Assembly (NCBI RefSeq): GCF_003918875.1
Contig: NW_025766447.1
Coordinates: 1,984,001-2,048,000 of the forward strand
Direction: 5' to 3'
Length of the DNA: 64,000 bases
Origin: Haliotis rubra
Lineage: Eukaryota
Shown in pieces: positions 10,844 through 17,948 of the stretch (position 1 is the stretch's first letter; each line of letters starts with the position of its first letter). Made by a program: the position numbers and the translations under genes. The notes under the pieces were generated by a model, which did no database searches, was not told the origin of the DNA, and saw only the letters and a list, made by a program, of their open reading frames with translations.

Positions 10844-11010
10844 GGGGCGGTGGGGTAGCCTAGTGGTTAAAGCGTTCGCTCGTCACGCCGAGGATCCGGG
10901 CTCCATTCCCCACATGGGCACAATGTGTGGAGCCCATTTCTGATGTCCCCAGTCGTGATATTGCTGGGATATTTCTAAAAACGGCGTAAAACCAAATTCA
11001 CTCACTCACT
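10844..11010 (+). mobile_element. tRNA-derived SINE family B (tRNA-Asp-like head), ~170 bp
   Basis: A-box TAGCCTAGTGGTTAAAGCG, GTC anticodon-like loop, degenerate B-box, tail GGCGTAAAACCAAATTCACTCACTCACT. Several similar copies occur in the window. Confidence 0.85.
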
Positions 11011-11235
11011 CTATCCACACCAAGCTGACACACCGTGATTTAACCTCCCTCACATTGCTGGTGAGTATCAGCGATCTGAATGTGACGACATGGTGATACC
11101 TCCGTTACATTCTTATATCACGGCTCAGGACGCTGGTGTCGCATTAACAGCGGACAAAACTCGGGGCAAATATTTATTATTTGTATGAAAACAAACCAAA
11201 TATGAGCAAATTGCTCTGTTGATCCTCCATGCGTT

Positions 11236-14107
11236 CTATGAGTGAGTGGGAGCTGGTTTGGTTGTCGTGTACAGCCCGGCAAGGGACTGCTCGAACTTGA
11301 GATGCTGGAACATAAACCTCAAACGTGAATAGTTGTCAAAGACAATGTCAATTTCACCAATGACACTTCGTGTGCACGGGACGTGAGCCATCTTGAATCA
11401 GCTAAGTACCCTCAATTTCACCTGTACTTACCGCTGACAAGTATACGTTAAAGAAGTGAGTTTCACCTGTACTTACCGCTGCCAAATAGGAGTTAAAGAA
11501 GTGAGTTTGAGCTGTACTTACCGCTGACAGGTAGGAGTTAAAGAAGTGAGTTTCACCTGTACTTACCGCTGACAGGTAGGAGTTAAAGAAGTGAGTTTCA
11601 CCTGTACTTACCGCTGACAGGTAGGAGTTAAAGAAGTGAGTTTGAGCTGTACTTACCGCTGACAGGTAGGAGTTAAAGAAGTGAGTTTGAGCTGTACTTA
11701 CCGCTGACAAATAGGAGTTAAAGAAGTGAGTTTGAGCTGTACTTACCGCTGACAGGTAGGAGTTAAAGAAGTGAGTTTCACCTGTACTTACCGCTGACAG
11801 GTAGGAGTTAAAGAAGTGAGTTTCACCTGTACTTACCGCTGACAGGTAGGAGTTAAAGAAGTGAGTTTCACCTGTACTTACCGCTGACAGGTAGGAGTTA
11901 AAGAAGTGAGTTTCACCTGTACTTACCGCTGACAGGTAGGAGTTAAAGAAGTGAGTTTCACCTGTACTTACCGCTGACAGGCAGGAGTTAAAGAAGTGAG
12001 TTTTCAGCTTCAGTAGGACAGTTAAAGAAGTGAGTTTCACCTGTACTTACCGCTGACAAATAGGAGTTAAAGAAGTGGGTTTCACCTGTACTTACCGCTG
12101 ACAAGTAGGTGTTAAAGAAGTGAGTTTTACCTGTAGTTACCCTGACAAGTAGGTGTTAAAGAAGTGAGTTTTACCTGTACTTACCGCTGACAGGTAGGAG
12201 TTAAAGAAGTGAGTTTCACCTGTACTTACCGCTGACAGGTAGGAGTTAAAGAAGTGAGTTTCACCTGTACTTACCGCTGACAGGTAGGAGTTAAAGAAGT
12301 GAGTTTCACCTGTACTTACCGCTGACAGGTAGGAGTTAAAGAAGTGAGTTTCACCTGTACTTACCGCTGACAGGTAGGAGTTAAAGAAGTGAGTTTCACC
12401 TGTACTTACCGCTGACAAAAGTAGGAGTTAAAGAAGTGAGTTTCACCTTGTAGGATTCAGAGAAGGAGTTTCACCTGTACTTACCGCTGACAGGTAGGAG
12501 TTAAAGAAGTGAGTTTCACCTGTACTTACCGCTGACAGGTAGGAGTTGAAGAAGTGAGCTTCAGCTGGCGTCACACCTGGAACAGACACAAGTAAACATG
12601 GATCACGATGGGATATAGGATGCGATTATAATTATAATAGTCAGGTTTCAAACAAAGACGTCTAACCGATATACGTCCTTCGTTTTCACGCCTGCAACAT
12701 ATCTACTGAGTGACTCTCATTTCACCTCACTGGTCGGTTCTGTTCATTTCTGTGACAAGGTGGTTAATGTGCCAGTGTTTTACTTAGTTATATTTCGGGG
12801 TCATCTTCTCGTAAGAGGGGTCTATGTCGGGTTAGAACTGATCTTCAGCAGCCCATGCTTGTCGTCAGAGGGGTCTATGTCGGGTTAGAACTGATCTTCA
12901 GCAGCCCATGCTTGTCGTCAGAGGGGTCTATGTCGGGTTAGAACTGATCTTCAGCAGCCCATGCTTGTCGTCAGAGGGGTCTATGTCGGGTTAGAACTGA
13001 TCTTCAGCAGCCCATGCTTGTCGTCAGAGGGGTCTATGTCGGGTTAGAACTGATCTTCAGCAGCCCATGCTTGTCGTCAGAGGGGTCTATGTCGGGTTAG
13101 AACTGATCTTCAGCAGCCCATGCTTGTCGTCAGAGGGGTCTATGTCGGGTTAGAACTGATCTTCAGCAGCCCATGCTTGTCGTCAGAGGGGTCTATGTCG
13201 GGTTAGAACTGATCTTCAGCAGCCCATGCTTGTCGTCAGAGGGGTCTATGTCGGGTTAGAACTGATCTTCAGCAGCCCATGCTTGTCGTCAGAGGGGTCT
13301 ATGTCGGGTTAGAACTGATCTTCAGCAGCCCATGCTTGTCGTCAGAGGGTCATATAGGTGTGGTTAGAACTGATCTTCAGCTTATGCTCCATGCTTGACT
13401 GTCAGAGGGGTCTACTTCAATTGGTTAGAATCGATGCTTCAGCAGCCCATGCTTGAATCACAGAATTATCTAGTCCAGATTCGATTGCTTACAGTCATAC
13501 AGTAGGACTATTGATAAGTGTGGAGTTAAATAACAAACAAACATACGTTATTTATATGTGCTCTGAAACCGATTAGATCATGTATGATAAGTTGCTGTGA
13601 CCAAGTGCTTTGCTATGTACCAGTATTGACACTTGTGGACGCATAATGTTCTTGCGTTCAGCCTATACAGATCTAATCGGCAACCATGCTTTCCATGTGC
13701 CACCTCGCCATTCACACACACAACAGCGCTAAGACTGGACTCACTCCAAACCATATAAACCCATTTGTCAACGAAGATGAAATACCACACAGGCCTTATC
13801 AACAAATACTCAGGAAGTCCGAAACTGACAGGAGTCCCACTGAAACTATATATATATACCATTACTTACTGTCCAACAAATCCAGGATTTTGTAGAAGCC
13901 GACAGTTGCAATATACGCCGTCAGCTGACAAGATTCGGCTGCCCCAATCAGTTCCGGGACGAGCGCCCTATTGTCAGCGGACATCGTGCTGTATGATGGG
14001 GATGTGTGGATGGCAGTCAGCAGTTTGAGAAGGTCCTCGTTCGGGGCACAGGGCCCCGAAGCAGCAGAGGTTGACAGCAATAACGCCAGGACCACGTAGA
14101 TGAGCAT
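11236..14107 (-). CDS. Uncharacterised small secreted protein, paralog A (~117 aa; coding exons 14107-13870, 12576-12530, 11304-11236)
   Basis: Manual splice gives MLIYVVLALLLSTSAASGPCAPNEDLLKLL...GFYKILDLLD|SVTPAEAHFFNSYLSA|HLKFEQSLAGLYTTTKPAPTHS*. All introns are GT-AG with consistent phases (1, 0). Hydrophobic signal peptide; AATAAA at 11173-11178 (rc). Exon structure is identical to paralog B. Confidence 0.85.
11410..12529 (-). repeat. Minisatellite, 45-bp unit made of exon 3' end plus 5' splice site of paralog A, ~24 copies
   Basis: Minus-strand unit GTAAGTACAGGTGAAACTCACTTCTTTAACTCCTACCTGTCAGCG. Its last ~30 nt match the end of exon 12576-12530. Confidence 0.92.
12815..13450 (+). repeat. 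Minisatellite, 53-bp unit amplified from the 5' part of a family A SINE, ~11-12 copies
   Basis: Unit CGGGTTAGAACTGATCTTCAGCAGCCCATGCTTGTCGTCAGAGG matches SINE CGGGTTAGAATATTGATCTTCAGTAACCCATGCTTGTCGTAAGAGG (63422-). The degenerate SINE 3' half follows to ~13540. Confidence 0.9.
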
Positions 14108-14477
14108 TGTAGGGAGTGGAGAGATGCTGAGGTATATAACGCTGTGGGACAAAGACGGTATATATGTCACACGGTCACATTGTCACAAATTGTCACACAT
14201 TGTCTTACCTGAGGAGACGCTGTGGACTGTATTTACCTGTATTGGATTCAGCGCAGAATATCTGATCCGCTTGGGAGGTGGAATATTCCAAAGAACTAGA
14301 TCAGTGGAGATAGTGTGTGAACACGCCAGACTGGAATGTCGCACCTTATCGGGCTTGTTTTGGGAATAACACCTGTCAAATCTAGTGTAAACGTGATGGC
14401 TTTGGGCCTGAATTAACACTGAATAGAAAGACGTGTCACACTCCTAGCTCTGTAACGCCGGATCTTCCTGATTTGGT

Positions 14478-14611
14478 NNNNNNNNNNNNNNNNNNNNNNN
14501 NNNNNNNNNNNNNNNNNNNNNNNNNNNNNNNNNNNNNNNNNNNNNNNNNNNNNNNNNNNNNNNNNNNNNNNNNNNNNNNNNNNNNNNNNNNNNNNNNNNN
14601 NNNNNNNNNNN
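14478..14611. other. Assembly gap (N run)
   Basis: Run of N. Confidence 1.
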
Positions 14612-14840
14612 GGTTGGAATTGGTCTTCAGTAACCCATGCTTGTCGTAAGAGGCGACTAACGGGATCGGGTGATCAGGCTCGCTGACTTGGTTGGCACAT
14701 GTCATCGTATCCAAGTTGCGTAATACGATGCTCATGCTGTTGATCACTGGATTGTCTGGTCCAGACTCGATCATTTACAGACCGCTGCCATATATAGCTG
14801 GAATATTGCTGAGTTAAACAATCAACCAATCAATCAATCA
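14612..14840 (+). mobile_element. SINE-like family A copy (5' end in gap)
   Basis: TTGGTCTTCAGTAACCCATGCTTGTCGTAAGAGGCGACTAACGGGATCGGGTGATCAGGCTCGCTGAC...GCTGGAATATTGCTGAG followed by (CAAT)n. Confidence 0.85.
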
Positions 14841-15547
14841 GTCATCATCGGCATCATCTGTGGTCGAACTCATGTTTCAGTTCTTGTCCAGGATTAACGG
14901 TTACACTTTTCCGATAGTTCGTCGTGTGTCCGTTTACTGGCTGTTTTGAGTGGCAGATGTGTCGTTCAGTGGCACGAGCCTTCCCTATATGTCAGCAGAT
15001 GTTTATAGCGATGAACAGCGTCTGTGCAGTTAAGGGGTATTTTGTGTCTAACAGAGAAACAGTATATAAAAAATGTGAGACTGTAATGCCAATTGGTTAT
15101 TGCAAAGAGAGTTCACACTTCGAGTTCAAAACATGATCGTGGCCAATGGCACAAGGGATCTTAATTATATATGTAGATTAATTGCCATCAACCCGCCATT
15201 CCTATTGTGCTTGGAACACATGTTGGCCAGCTGGCATGGGCCTATCATTCCTATAGTCTCTGGAGGAATATTGCCAACAGTCGTCAACGATGTACACAAA
15301 TACGAAACGTGGATAGTCGTCGCTGGTCAGACGAATCCCGACTCACTTGATGGGCGTGTCTGTCAGATTTGGCGGTGGATCGGGTCTGGTGTGGGTGGCA
15401 TCGCCATGCCTTAACGAACCACACCTCACATTGTACATGTAACGGTTGCTGGGCAGTAAACGTAAAACTCTGACACTGTGTGTAGTCCCGTTTGCAGGAC
15501 GTTTGCCTACCGTGCGCAGCTCACTTCCAGCATCCATAGAATACCAT

Positions 15548-15672
15548 GGGGGCGGTGGGGTACCCTAGTGGTTAAAGCGTTGGCTCGTCACGCCGAAGAC
15601 CCGGGTTCGAATCCCCAGGGTACAATCATTTCTGGTGTTCCCCGCCGTGAGCGTTGCTGGAATATTGCAGCA
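15548..15672 (+). mobile_element. tRNA-derived SINE family B copy (3'-truncated)
   Basis: GGGGGCGGTGGGGTACCCTAGTGGTTAAAGCG...GGGTTCGAATCCCC (B-box)...GCTGGAATATTGC. Confidence 0.8.
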
Positions 15673-16115
15673 TCCATCAGAGATACCATGGCCAGCAATG
15701 AGCCCTACCATTTCCCGAATGAAATCGTCTGGAGCGTTAAAGGTTACTGGCCATGATACCTGGCCAAGCACTCCAAAAGGAGTAGGACAAAATGCCTTTT
15801 GGGGGAAACTTACACACGGTATGCCGCGTCGAGTGATCGAATGCCTGAGAAGTCGTGGCGGCTTTTACCACTATCGATCCAAAAACGTCAACTGTGCCTT
15901 CTCACATATGAGCGTTGTCGTCCTCCAAGATACTTGGCGGCCATAACCTGTTTGTTTGTATGTATATCAGTCGATGGGGACCATCTATTTACTTCATTTT
16001 AAACAGAAGCCACATTACCAGCACAGAAAACGTAAGAACGAAGATATTTTGTCTCATATTTATTCACTTTCATGTTTTTTCAGATTCGGCAATAAGTAAG
16101 TCCTGCCCTCGTGTA

Positions 16116-17151
16116 TCAGTGAGAAGTGTGTGGACGAGTTGTTGTGTGGCTAAGCTTGTCGAACACAGCCTTCTCAATGTTAAGATGCTGAAATCCAACA
16201 GAGAGTTGAACACATGCGCTGAAGACACGATGGAGGGCAATTCTGACTCATCTTCTATACCTACTGCGTACTCTAATGATATCTTGTAAGGTCTGTAGTC
16301 AGACATGCCAGTGAGTCAAGAACGGATATAAATAACACAGGCTGAGGATGAATATTCTCTTCCGTTGCTGTTGGGTCGAACACAACCAAGGGTTTCTAAA
16401 ACTTACGGACCAACTTGTAAATATACCTTGTCCATAACATGTTATAAAATATAGATAGTCAACAGAAATCCCGTCTTCCCCCAATGTACCCTTTCTGACA
16501 GGTAATAGTACTGAATCTGTTCACATTCACATTCGCCTCCGAGTCCTGCCGCCACATACTCACCTTAACGATGTAGGAGTTCAACACGTGGGCTTCCTGA
16601 GGAGTCAGGCCTGAAATGACACAGAGGTTTACCCATTTATGGCATGGGGACAATGACACTTTCTGATACTACAATGTCAAAGGATTTATAAGTAAAAACG
16701 TTTGCTAACGTCGAAGATTTTGTTGTAAGCACAAGAACGTATTTATCCATGCCTTGGTTTGCCAGGATGCACCAGAAACTAAATGGTATTCTTTTTGGGT
16801 TTGTGCCCGGAAAACACATGAATGCCATGCTGGAGGAAGCACAGCACACGAATGACATGCTGGGTGTAGCGCCAGCACACATGCCAGTAGTCCAGTGGTT
16901 TACTTACTGTCCAGCAAACCGAGGACTTTGCTGAAGCCGACGGTGTTGATGTAGGCTGTGAGCTGACAGGTCTGGACCTCCGACACCATCTCCGTCATCA
17001 TCACCTTGTTCTCGGCAGACAGGGTGTTGTAGGAGGGGGTGTTGTGGACGACCTTCAGGAAACTCAGTAGATCCTCATTGGGAGCACATGGGCCATTGAT
17101 GGCCACAGCAGACGACAACAGCACCAAGGTGAAGGTCAAATATACCAGCAT
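16116..17151 (-). CDS. Uncharacterised small secreted protein, paralog B (~120 aa; coding exons 17151-16908, 16610-16564, 16187-16116)
   Basis: MLVYLTFTLVLLSSAVAINGPCAPNEDLLSFL...GFSKVLGLLD|SLTPQEAHVLNSYIVK|HLNIEKAVFDKLSHTTTRPHTSH*. GT-AG introns with the same phases and the same 47-nt middle exon as paralog A. Acceptor at 17158 precedes the ATG; AATAAA at ~16059-16064 (rc). Confidence 0.88.
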
Positions 17152-17948
17152 TTTAGCCTGAAAGGCAACGGCAGAGATATAAGACTGATGTGAAGCATTT
17201 AATGTGGCAGGTTATTACTATTCATATTGTCACTACTTAGACACTTGAAAGTGCCGATAAGGAACTCTTTCAAAGAGAGGGAACACTCAAAAATACTTGC
17301 ATAGTTTCTTGCATAAGATGTTTATCGGCAATCACTGTCTTTGTCCTAATACAAAGTAGCGATTGCATGGATTACAACTTCTTTAATACTAAGTCTCATG
17401 TGGCAACATTTCTAGATAACTTTATGCGACTACTTAGGAGTTGCGTGGAGGTTTCATGTTCCTCTACTTTACGGCGAGGCAGCATGAAAAGTGCCCAGAC
17501 TGGCTGAGCGATACGGAATAAGGACCTGTTTACATTTTAGCAATTCTGAAAACTGATTGGTTATTTGGGCGACATGACGACTCAAGATTTACAAGGATGT
17601 AATTGGTACAGTTCACCATAACACTAAAGCCTAAACTGACGTACCAAAAGAAAGTACACACATGGTTCTTTGGGATATTTTTCCAAGGGAACGTTAATAT
17701 TTTGTAAAGTGTTTTGGTTGTGACTTATGCTTGTGACGAGTTAGCCACAATCAAAACACACAACATTTAAGTCGCTTCTAAGAACACAATCCCAAAACGT
17801 CATGTCTGTACATGGTTTTGTATGTCAGTTTACATTACTTTCCAACCATCAATGATAACTGTTTATTGTTCCCTGTGGGGACCCAGGGTAGAATGTGTTC
17901 CCATCACACTGTTGGCGATCGTAAGCGGCGATCGCATTGGGCAAGCAC

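What the first reader, a model, noticed from the sequence alone, without database searches (positions are those of the whole stretch)
11236..17151. Tandem pair of unrecognised small secreted helical proteins
Seen: two paralogs with identical exon phases and an identical 47-nt middle exon. Both have a signal peptide, conserved GPCAPNEDLL, TPSY/SPSY, CQLTAYI.TVGF.K.L.LLDS.TP.EAH..NSY and HL..E motifs, exactly two mature-chain Cys (one likely disulfide) and a Thr/Pro/His tail. Paralog B has a clean TATA promoter. The six-frame track shows only the first coding exon of each. I cannot assign a family. Inference: lineage-restricted secreted effectors (shell or mantle matrix, mucus, pheromone or defence), with amphipathic helices suggesting a ligand-binding helical bundle.
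Basis: partly seen in the sequence, partly recalled or inferred. Interest (0 to 1): 0.7.

Follow-up and report, generated by a model that had tools for sequence, protein, structure and literature searches.

The report
Tandem secreted helical-domain genes in abalone
Two neighbouring abalone genes do encode small secreted all-helical proteins, and they belong to a large, unnamed protein family found across molluscs whose function has never been tested.

Summary
On the minus strand lie two intact three-exon genes: A (14107-11236) and B (17151-16116). They have GT..AG introns, intron phases 1 and 0, and a 47-nt middle exon. The exon lengths match, but the sequences are only 29/47 identical. The spliced products equal RefSeq 'uncharacterized' proteins of Haliotis rubra: LOC124278554 (117 aa) and LOC124278556 (120 aa). 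The assembly gap (14478-14611) is intergenic, 370 nt upstream of A's ATG, and touches no exon.

The pair is not an abalone-only orphan. A profile search found about 98 real clusters, and every named one is a gastropod or bivalve. H. rubra itself has 16 first-exon matches, each ending at or near the exon 1/2 boundary. All five paralogues read in full have a 47-nt exon 2. Many relatives carry 2-4 tandem domains separated by KR/RR sites. Cys occur as 0 or 2 per domain.

AlphaFold gives a six-helix, four-helix-bundle-like domain (core pLDDT about 90). It has no significant Pfam, PDB or fold match. DUF4476, insect allergen repeat and MgtE_N membership were tested and not met.

A versus B gives dN/dS 0.27, so the duplication is old and constrained. 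No abalone RNA data could be reached. The function (extracellular binding or carrier module versus signalling ligand) is inferred only.

The parts
16908..17151 (-). Gene B exon 1: ATG at 17151, signal peptide, and the first ~62 mature residues. It ends in phase 1 and the donor is GTAAGT.
   Evidence: 100% to P0001, LOC124278556
16564..16610 (-). Gene B exon 2, 47 nt (S-LTPQEAHVLNSYIVK). Acceptor tttcag, donor GTGAGT.
16116..16187 (-). Gene B exon 3 coding part (HLNIEK... Thr/Pro/His tail, TGA stop). AATAAA at 16064..16059.
13870..14107 (-). Gene A exon 1: ATG at 14107, signal peptide, and the first ~62 mature residues. It ends in phase 1.
   Evidence: 100% to P0003, LOC124278554 isoform X2
12530..12576 (-). 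Gene A exon 2, 47 nt (S-VTPAEAHFFNSYLSA).
11236..11304 (-). Gene A exon 3 coding part (HLKFEQ... Thr/Pro/His tail, TAG stop). AATAAA at 11178..11173.
14478..14611 (.). Assembly gap. It is intergenic, 370 nt upstream of A's ATG and about 1.45 kb downstream of B's polyA signal. Its right edge abuts SINE-like sequence.
   Evidence: Not filled.
11416..12529 (-). Intron 2 of gene A: a 45-nt tandem array of about 25 units. Each unit copies the 3' part of exon 2 plus its GTAAGT donor.
12805..13455 (.). Intron 1 of gene A: a 53-nt x 12 tandem array. The unit resembles the SINE-like sequence at 14612-14665.
17176..17182 (-). TATA-like TTATATC 25-31 nt upstream of B's ATG. A has TATATA at 14133-14138 at the same distance. 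Promoter status is unverified.
   Evidence: No RNA 5' ends available.

Best explanation
Shown: A and B are two intact, anciently duplicated, tandem genes of Haliotis rubra. Each makes a signal-peptide-bearing precursor of 117 or 120 aa.

Predicted or inferred: the mature product of about 100 aa is predicted to be an acidic, autonomous all-alpha domain. It has six helices packed like a four-helix bundle. One disulfide probably staples the N-terminal GPC segment to the Cys at the start of the CQLTAYI motif (inferred). The domain is followed by a short Thr/Pro/His tail that is probably O-glycosylated (inferred).

Shown: the two genes are the Cys-bearing branch of an uncurated family of secreted helical domains found across molluscs. 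All five H. rubra paralogues I read in full share the gene plan: a phase-1 intron at domain position ~75, a 47-nt exon, then a phase-0 intron.

Inferred: the single domain is the working unit. In single-domain genes like A and B it is freed by signal peptidase. In the 2-4-domain relatives of other molluscs it is probably freed by dibasic (KR/RR) convertase cleavage.

Inferred, about 35% on its own: the domain acts outside the cell as a soluble binding or carrier module for a small hydrophobic or metal ligand in gut or mucosal fluid. This would be analogous to, but not homologous with, nematode polyprotein lipid-binding proteins.
For: - Gene models and splice sites were read directly. The spliced products are identical to RefSeq models P0001 and P0003, and orthologues of the same length exist in H. 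rufescens and H. asinina.
- A versus B: dN 0.35, dS 1.33, omega 0.27 over 98 mature codons.
- A second abalone DNA sample, about 3% diverged, keeps B's frame and splice sites. It has 6 synonymous codon changes against 3 replacement codons.
- Family breadth: 17 proteins, then 100 clusters at E<=1e-3, 98 of them real. Named members are all gastropods or bivalves.
- This genome has 16 first-exon matches. All end at model positions 73-77, which is the exon 1/2 boundary.
- Five paralogues read in full all have a 47-nt exon 2 and phases 1/0.
- The single-domain model has pLDDT 76.9 overall and about 90 in the core, with six helices.
- The two-domain relative has pTM 0.44 and a linker below pLDDT 50. 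The domains do not pack, which fits beads on a string.
- KR/RR sits in nearly every inter-domain linker.
- Cys occur as 0 or 2 per domain, at three interchangeable sites.
- The family is acidic, median pI 5.2.
- Two Littorina members were recovered 99% identical in the transcriptome of a parasite that sits on Littorina gut epithelium. This shows spliced, expressed family members in or near the gut.
Against: - No RNA or protein evidence for A or B themselves could be obtained.
- The signal peptides were judged by eye. A and B lack a basic n-region.
- Dibasic linkers fit a hormone or pheromone precursor equally well.
- The gut hint comes from another snail and from different paralogues.
Confidence: 0.6

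Rival explanations
1. The domain is an extracellular signalling ligand (hormone-, pheromone- or cytokine-like). It would be made in the regulated secretory pathway and would act through a receptor rather than by carrying a ligand.
For: - It has a signal peptide and is small, with a four-helix-bundle-like shape.
- Relatives are polyproteins with KR/RR between units, as in neuropeptide and pheromone precursors.
- 9 of 68 complete members end in G, GK or GR, the amidation signal. About 3 would be expected by chance.
- Orthologues diverge fairly fast: 81-83% identity between H. rubra and H. rufescens.
Against: - A and B have no dibasic site and no C-terminal Gly.
- The family is large, and the recovery of its transcripts as host carry-over in a gut-parasite data set suggests abundant expression.
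- There are mucin-like fusions (P0081). These fit bulk secreted proteins better than hormones.
- No receptor or neuroendocrine expression is known.
Confidence: 0.2
2. The proteins are structural or mucus/matrix components. The helical domain would be a self-association or cross-linking module, and the Thr/Pro/His tail a glycosylated or metal-coordinating spacer in shell matrix, mucus or byssus-like material.
For: - A and B carry Thr/Pro/His tails.
- Relatives have long Thr-rich N-terminal regions and are named 'threonine-rich protein-like'.
- His-rich and Asp-rich linkers recur.
- One member comes from a Pinctada fucata transcriptome-type record.
Against: - There is no repeat-rich or low-complexity body in A or B.
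- The two-domain model shows no inter-domain packing.
- No shell-proteome name is attached to any member looked up.
Confidence: 0.12
3. The family is a very diverged branch of an existing Pfam family: DUF4476 (as UniRef labels two members), the insect allergen ANP repeat, or the MgtE_N/FliG ARM-like repeat.
For: - UniRef names P0007 and P0115 'DUF4476 domain-containing protein'.
- MgtE_N appears below threshold in 9 of 34 members, best E 0.0028.
- A designed armadillo repeat scores E 0.016 in the PDB sequence search.
- An insect allergen-repeat protein appears at E 4.7e-4.
Against: - PF14771.11 hits none of 15 members scanned, even at E<=10, and hits none of the family loci in the genome.
- The insect hit is a sum of seven 1-8-bit repeat matches. 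hhalign gives probability 1.5%.
- All MgtE_N scores are below the 25.9-bit cut-off.
- Fold searches list no member of these families above background.
Confidence: 0.08

Closest known systems
Uncharacterised RefSeq/UniProt proteins of molluscs (e.g. Haliotis rufescens LOC124152874/5, Gigantopelta aegis LOC121385010, Patella caerulea SNE40_009467, Mya arenaria LOC128217387, Mizuhopecten yessoensis LOC110450103)
   Same: - True homologues, E 1e-16 to 1e-54.
- Same signal peptide plus helical domain.
- The Gigantopelta and Patella proteins share the GPCAPNED and CQLTAYI Cys motifs with A and B.
   Different: - None has a tested function or a curated family.
- Many are 2-4-domain polyproteins with dibasic linkers, whereas A and B are single-domain.
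Nematode polyprotein allergens/antigens (NPA, e.g. Ascaris ABA-1). From general knowledge, not tested here.
   Same: - Small helix-rich secreted units.
- In relatives the units are made as tandem polyproteins with basic cleavage sites between them.
- Invertebrate body- or gut-fluid context.
   Different: - No sequence or fold match was found.
- The unit is about 85-100 aa rather than about 130 aa.
- Lipid binding is untested.
- A and B are single units.
Insect allergen repeat / ANP domain (Pfam PF06757, Bla g 1)
   Same: - Secreted, tandemly repeated domains of about 100 aa with amphipathic helices, in an arthropod gut protein.
- One weak profile hit.
   Different: - The hit is a repeat-summed artefact.
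- No Pfam hit.
- hhalign probability 1.5%.
- The two-domain model does not form a capsule.
DUF4476 (Pfam PF14771; similarity also reported for the N-terminal part of spiralian lophotrochin, PMC7441323)
   Same: UniRef attaches this label to two family members.
   Different: - The Pfam model does not match any member or locus tested.
- DUF4476 itself has no known function.
Generic up-down four-helix bundles (e.g. DGR Avd 4dwl, Xcc0516 2gsc)
   Different: - Sequence identity is 4-11%.
- The biology is unrelated, so this is an arrangement in common, not kinship.

Membership tests
Mollusc secreted helical-domain family (uncurated; defined here by alignments A3/A5) | Significant match to the family profile over the whole ~80-residue domain | tested here: met
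   A and B score 1e-51 to 1e-54 against profile A2. Distant paralogues hit A and B reciprocally in the genome.
Mollusc secreted helical-domain family (uncurated; defined here by alignments A3/A5) | N-terminal signal peptide followed directly by the domain | tested here: inconclusive
   A hydrophobic N-terminus with small residues at the cut site was read by eye in all members. No signal-peptide predictor was available.
Mollusc secreted helical-domain family (uncurated; defined here by alignments A3/A5) | Gene plan: phase-1 intron near domain position 75, a 47-nt exon, then a phase-0 intron | tested here: met
   Read in A, B and three distant paralogues. All 16 genomic first-exon matches end at model positions 73-77.
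DUF4476 (PF14771) | Score over the curated cut-off (22.5 bits) of the Pfam model | tested here: not met
   No hit at E<=10 in 15 members, including the two that UniRef labels so. The genome scan with PF14771 hits other places only, at 20.9 bits or less. Those places do not match the family profile.
Insect allergen repeat (PF06757, Bla g 1 ANP) | Pfam match or profile-profile similarity | tested here: not met
   No Pfam hit. hhalign probability 1.5% against seven-unit repeats of P0111. Per-repeat scores are 8 bits or less.
Insect allergen repeat (PF06757, Bla g 1 ANP) | Two consecutive repeats close into one helical capsule | tested here: not met
   The two-domain relative has pTM 0.44 and a disordered linker. 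No such structure appeared among the Foldseek matches.
MgtE_N / FliG ARM-like repeat (PF03448) | Score over the curated cut-off (25.9 bits) | tested here: not met
   [not shown]
Nematode polyprotein allergen-like carriers (works-like comparison) | Tandem helix-rich units separated by basic convertase sites | tested here: met
   Met for the multi-domain relatives, where KR/RR sits in nearly all linkers. Not applicable to the single-domain A and B.
Nematode polyprotein allergen-like carriers (works-like comparison) | Binds fatty acids or retinoids in a helical pocket | not testable with these tools
   Needs purified protein.

The most novel reading that the evidence does not exclude
The domain is a previously undescribed, mollusc-specific helical fold. 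It is made both singly and as convertase-cut polyproteins. It would constitute a new class of extracellular carrier or signalling proteins, for example gut-lumen lipid or metal shuttles, or water-borne cues. In that case A and B would be a disulfide-stapled, functionally diverged pair.
Probability: 0.3. Interest if true: 0.6.

Novelty: new variant of a known kind. Interest (0 to 1): 0.42.

Why it matters
Molluscs are rich in secreted proteins that no database can name. This finding turns two 'uncharacterized' abalone genes into entry points for a definable domain family. The family has about 98 clusters across gastropods and bivalves and at least 16 first-exon matches in this genome. All of those matches end at the same exon boundary, and the five paralogues read in full share one gene plan. 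The prediction is confident, and no sequence or fold relative is known.

That is enough to justify a curated family entry and a simple set of experiments: expression mapping, mass spectrometry of gut fluid and mucus, and ligand screens. If the polyprotein relatives are cut into single domains, the family would parallel the nematode and insect helix-rich carriers, arrived at independently.

It is not, on present evidence, a surprising mechanism. The genes themselves are already predicted in RefSeq.

Tried and rejected
1. Insect allergen (Bla g 1) kinship. I suspected this from motif resemblance and a hit at E 4.7e-4. I rejected it because the hit is a sum of seven weak repeat matches, hhalign gives 1.5%, and no Pfam or fold support exists.

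2. P0077 (1424 aa, E 6e-7). This is the same kind of artefact: perfect bacterial-type repeats scoring 8 bits each.

3. DUF4476 label from UniRef. Not reproducible with PF14771.11.

4. Internal duplication of the domain (two helix-loop-helix halves). The halves align as expected, but E is 0.02 and probability 2%, so I make no claim.

6. ESM Atlas. Best score 0.77-0.78, below the chance level.

7. PDB sequence search with two profiles. Nothing below E 0.01.

8. Literature. Gene numbers, accessions and three short motifs found no paper.

9. RNA evidence. The single run search found three runs of one sample. They are DNA contigs that cover the introns, so this gives no verdict on expression.

11. 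Cationic antimicrobial peptide idea. Set aside because the family is acidic.

12. Complex prediction was not run. The report makes no binding claim, and the two-domain model already shows no confident domain pairing.

Exons were searched by reference. The full-length proteins used are database records returned by those searches.


Full report
**What is in the sequence**

Reading 11000-17400 on both strands shows two genes on the minus strand.

- Gene B: exon 1 17151..16908, exon 2 16610..16564, exon 3 coding part 16187..16116 (TGA), AATAAA at 16064..16059.
- Gene A: exon 1 14107..13870, exon 2 12576..12530, exon 3 coding part 11304..11236 (TAG), AATAAA at 11178..11173.

In both genes exon 1 ends after the first base of a Ser codon (phase 1). 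Exon 2 is 47 nt and ends in phase 0. All introns are GT..AG with good consensus.

The two middle exons are equal in length but share only 29 of 47 bases. 'Identical' therefore holds for size and phase only.

**The gap**

The N run 14478-14611 lies between B's polyA signal and A's ATG, 370 nt upstream of the ATG. No exon or credible frame crosses it. The 'ORFs' listed across it are runs of X. Its right edge abuts SINE-like sequence that also resembles the 53-nt array unit in A's intron 1, so a repeat probably broke the assembly there.

The tandem order does not rest on the join. The H. rufescens orthologues have consecutive gene numbers on one chromosome-sized record.

**How the searches were done**

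Exons were searched by reference. The exon-1 searches returned database proteins that are 100% identical over exon 1, and their remainder equals exons 2 and 3 as I read them:

- P0001: 120 aa, 'uncharacterized protein LOC124278556 [Haliotis rubra]'.
- P0003: 117 aa, 'LOC124278554 isoform X2'.

These records were used for the later full-length work. The organism is therefore the blacklip abalone. The genes are already predicted in RefSeq, without a name.

**Are they real genes?**

- Orthologues of the same length exist in H. rufescens and H. asinina.
- A versus B, computed exon by exon, gives dN 0.35, dS 1.33 and omega 0.27 over 98 mature codons, and omega 0.17 in the exon-1 part. The duplication is old and under purifying selection.
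- The one sequencing sample that holds the locus proved to be DNA, about 3% diverged, with contigs that run through the introns.
- In that sample B's frame, stop and splice sites are intact. Its 10 coding differences make 6 synonymous codon changes and 3 replacement codons: V16M, D27N and F106M.
Direct transcript evidence for A and B is therefore missing.

**The pair is part of a much larger family**

- Searching the genome with B found three distant paralogues at 24-27% identity, on C2126 and about 1 Mb away on the same contig.
- Reading them showed the same plan: signal peptide, phase-1 intron, a 47-nt exon, phase-0 intron and a short tail. They lack the GPCAPNE segment and both Cys.
- A profile of all eight sequences found 17 proteins in Haliotis species, Gigantopelta and Patella.
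- A profile of those 17, run against 1.84 billion representatives, found 100 clusters at E<=1e-3 and 56 at E<=1e-10. Two of the 100 are repeat-summed artefacts.
- Every named member is a mollusc: Mya, Mizuhopecten, Saccostrea, Ostrea, Mytilus, Pinctada, Potamilus, Batillaria, Plakobranchus, Nucella, Aplysia and Littorina. All are 'uncharacterized'.
- A profile scan of the H. rubra genome gives 16 first-exon matches. Eleven of them lie in a ~105-kb cluster on C2334, spaced in a way that suggests five two-domain genes plus one single-domain gene. Every match stops at model position 73-77, the exon 1/2 boundary.

**Architecture across the family**

- Many relatives carry 2-4 domains.
- Nearly every inter-domain linker contains KR or RR shortly before the residue that aligns with the mature N-terminus of single-domain proteins. 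These linkers are often flanked by His- or Asp-rich stretches.
- The AlphaFold model of a two-domain member has well-formed domains (pLDDT about 80-88) but pTM 0.44 and a linker below 50. The domains look independent. This fits cleavage into single units and argues against an obligatory two-domain capsule.
- Some members carry long Thr-rich N-terminal regions.
- 9 of 68 complete members end in G, GK or GR, against about 3 expected. This is a mild hint of amidation in a subset.
- Cys occur as none or two per domain, at three interchangeable sites: the N-terminal segment, the loop just after helix 3, and the C-terminal tail.

**Fold**

- The model of B built from 17 sequences has pLDDT 76.9, about 90 over residues 30-100. 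Its helices are at 26-36, 39-42, 46-60, 64-71, 73-82 and 85-111.
- Foldseek finds nothing at E<=0.001.
- The shape is therefore four-helix-bundle-like, with no identifiable relative.

**Known families considered**

- Pfam gives no hit over threshold for any member.
- UniRef calls two members 'DUF4476 domain-containing'. PF14771.11 matches none of them, nor the loci in the genome. [quoted passage not shown]
- My own suspicion of kinship with the insect allergen repeat failed every test.
- MgtE_N recurs below threshold in 9 of 34 members, and a designed armadillo repeat scores E 0.016. This probably reflects a shared helix-loop-helix periodicity rather than descent.
- PDB sequence searches, the ESM Atlas and the literature gave nothing.

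**What it most likely does**

Shown:
- Intact, constrained genes for small proteins with hydrophobic N-termini.
- A conserved helical domain.
- A mollusc-wide family.
- Dibasic linkers in the polyprotein relatives.
- An acidic character, median pI 5.2.

Indirect: two Littorina members are present, 99% identical, in the single-cell transcriptome attributed to Digyalum oweni. That parasite sits on Littorina gut epithelium (PMC6733595). These are host messages, so at least some family members are spliced and, by inference from their carry-over, abundant in or near the snail gut.

Inferred: the single domain is the functional unit, exported to the outside. I think a soluble binding or carrier role in gut or mucosal fluid is the most likely function (about 35%). 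It would be comparable in logic to nematode polyprotein lipid carriers. A signalling-ligand role comes next (about 20%), then a mucus or matrix role (about 12%). None of these is tested.

**Verdict**

- It is too narrow on lineage, because the family spans molluscs rather than abalone alone.
- Its suggested roles have no support yet.
- Novelty lies in recognising an uncurated domain family with a conserved gene plan and polyprotein relatives. It does not lie in the two genes themselves, which RefSeq already predicts.

Noticed in passing
window 11416-12529 (minus strand, intron 2 of gene A): There are about 25 tandem 45-nt units. Each is about 43/45 identical to the last 33 nt of exon 2 plus the GTAAGTACAGGT donor. 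Using the second donor would add 15 residues in frame. Plain read-through meets a stop after two units (ORF 12589..12443). RefSeq lists P0003 as 'isoform X2', so another isoform exists.
   Followed up: partly
L007:451-1271 (G000:C1557, intron 2 of a distant paralogue): A 41-nt x 19.8 tandem array starts about 70 nt after exon 2's donor. Every unit contains CAGGTAATGT. This is a second family member with a donor-like minisatellite in the same intron. I could not show homology to A's array (only 7 nt are shared with its own donor).
   Followed up: no
window 12805-13455 and 14612-14830: A 53-nt x 12 array lies in intron 1 of A. Its unit resembles the SINE-like element that begins exactly at the right edge of the assembly gap. 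A similar element sits in intron 2 of the L004 paralogue.
   Followed up: no
window 15551-15640: A tRNA-like SINE head (GGGGTACCCTAGTGGTTAAAGCG... GGTTCGAATCCCC) lies between the two genes. ARAGORN calls no tRNA.
   Followed up: partly
G000:C2334:2045483-2151348: Eleven first-exon-like matches to the family profile lie within about 105 kb. Their spacing suggests five two-domain genes plus one single-domain gene. This is the largest cluster of the family in this genome.
   Followed up: no
window 16527-16534 (intron 2 of gene B): In the other abalone DNA sample, 6 bases are replaced by 70 other letters. Small indels also occur at 16364, 16442, 16472, 16478 and 16693. All are intronic.
   Followed up: no
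window 17152-17182 and 14108-14150: Both genes have a TATA-like motif at -31..-25 from the ATG. In B a strong acceptor-like site (cctttcag|G) ends 6 nt before the ATG. The H. rufescens B orthologue has an isoform with a 20-residue N-terminal extension (P0002). The true 5' ends are open.
   Followed up: partly
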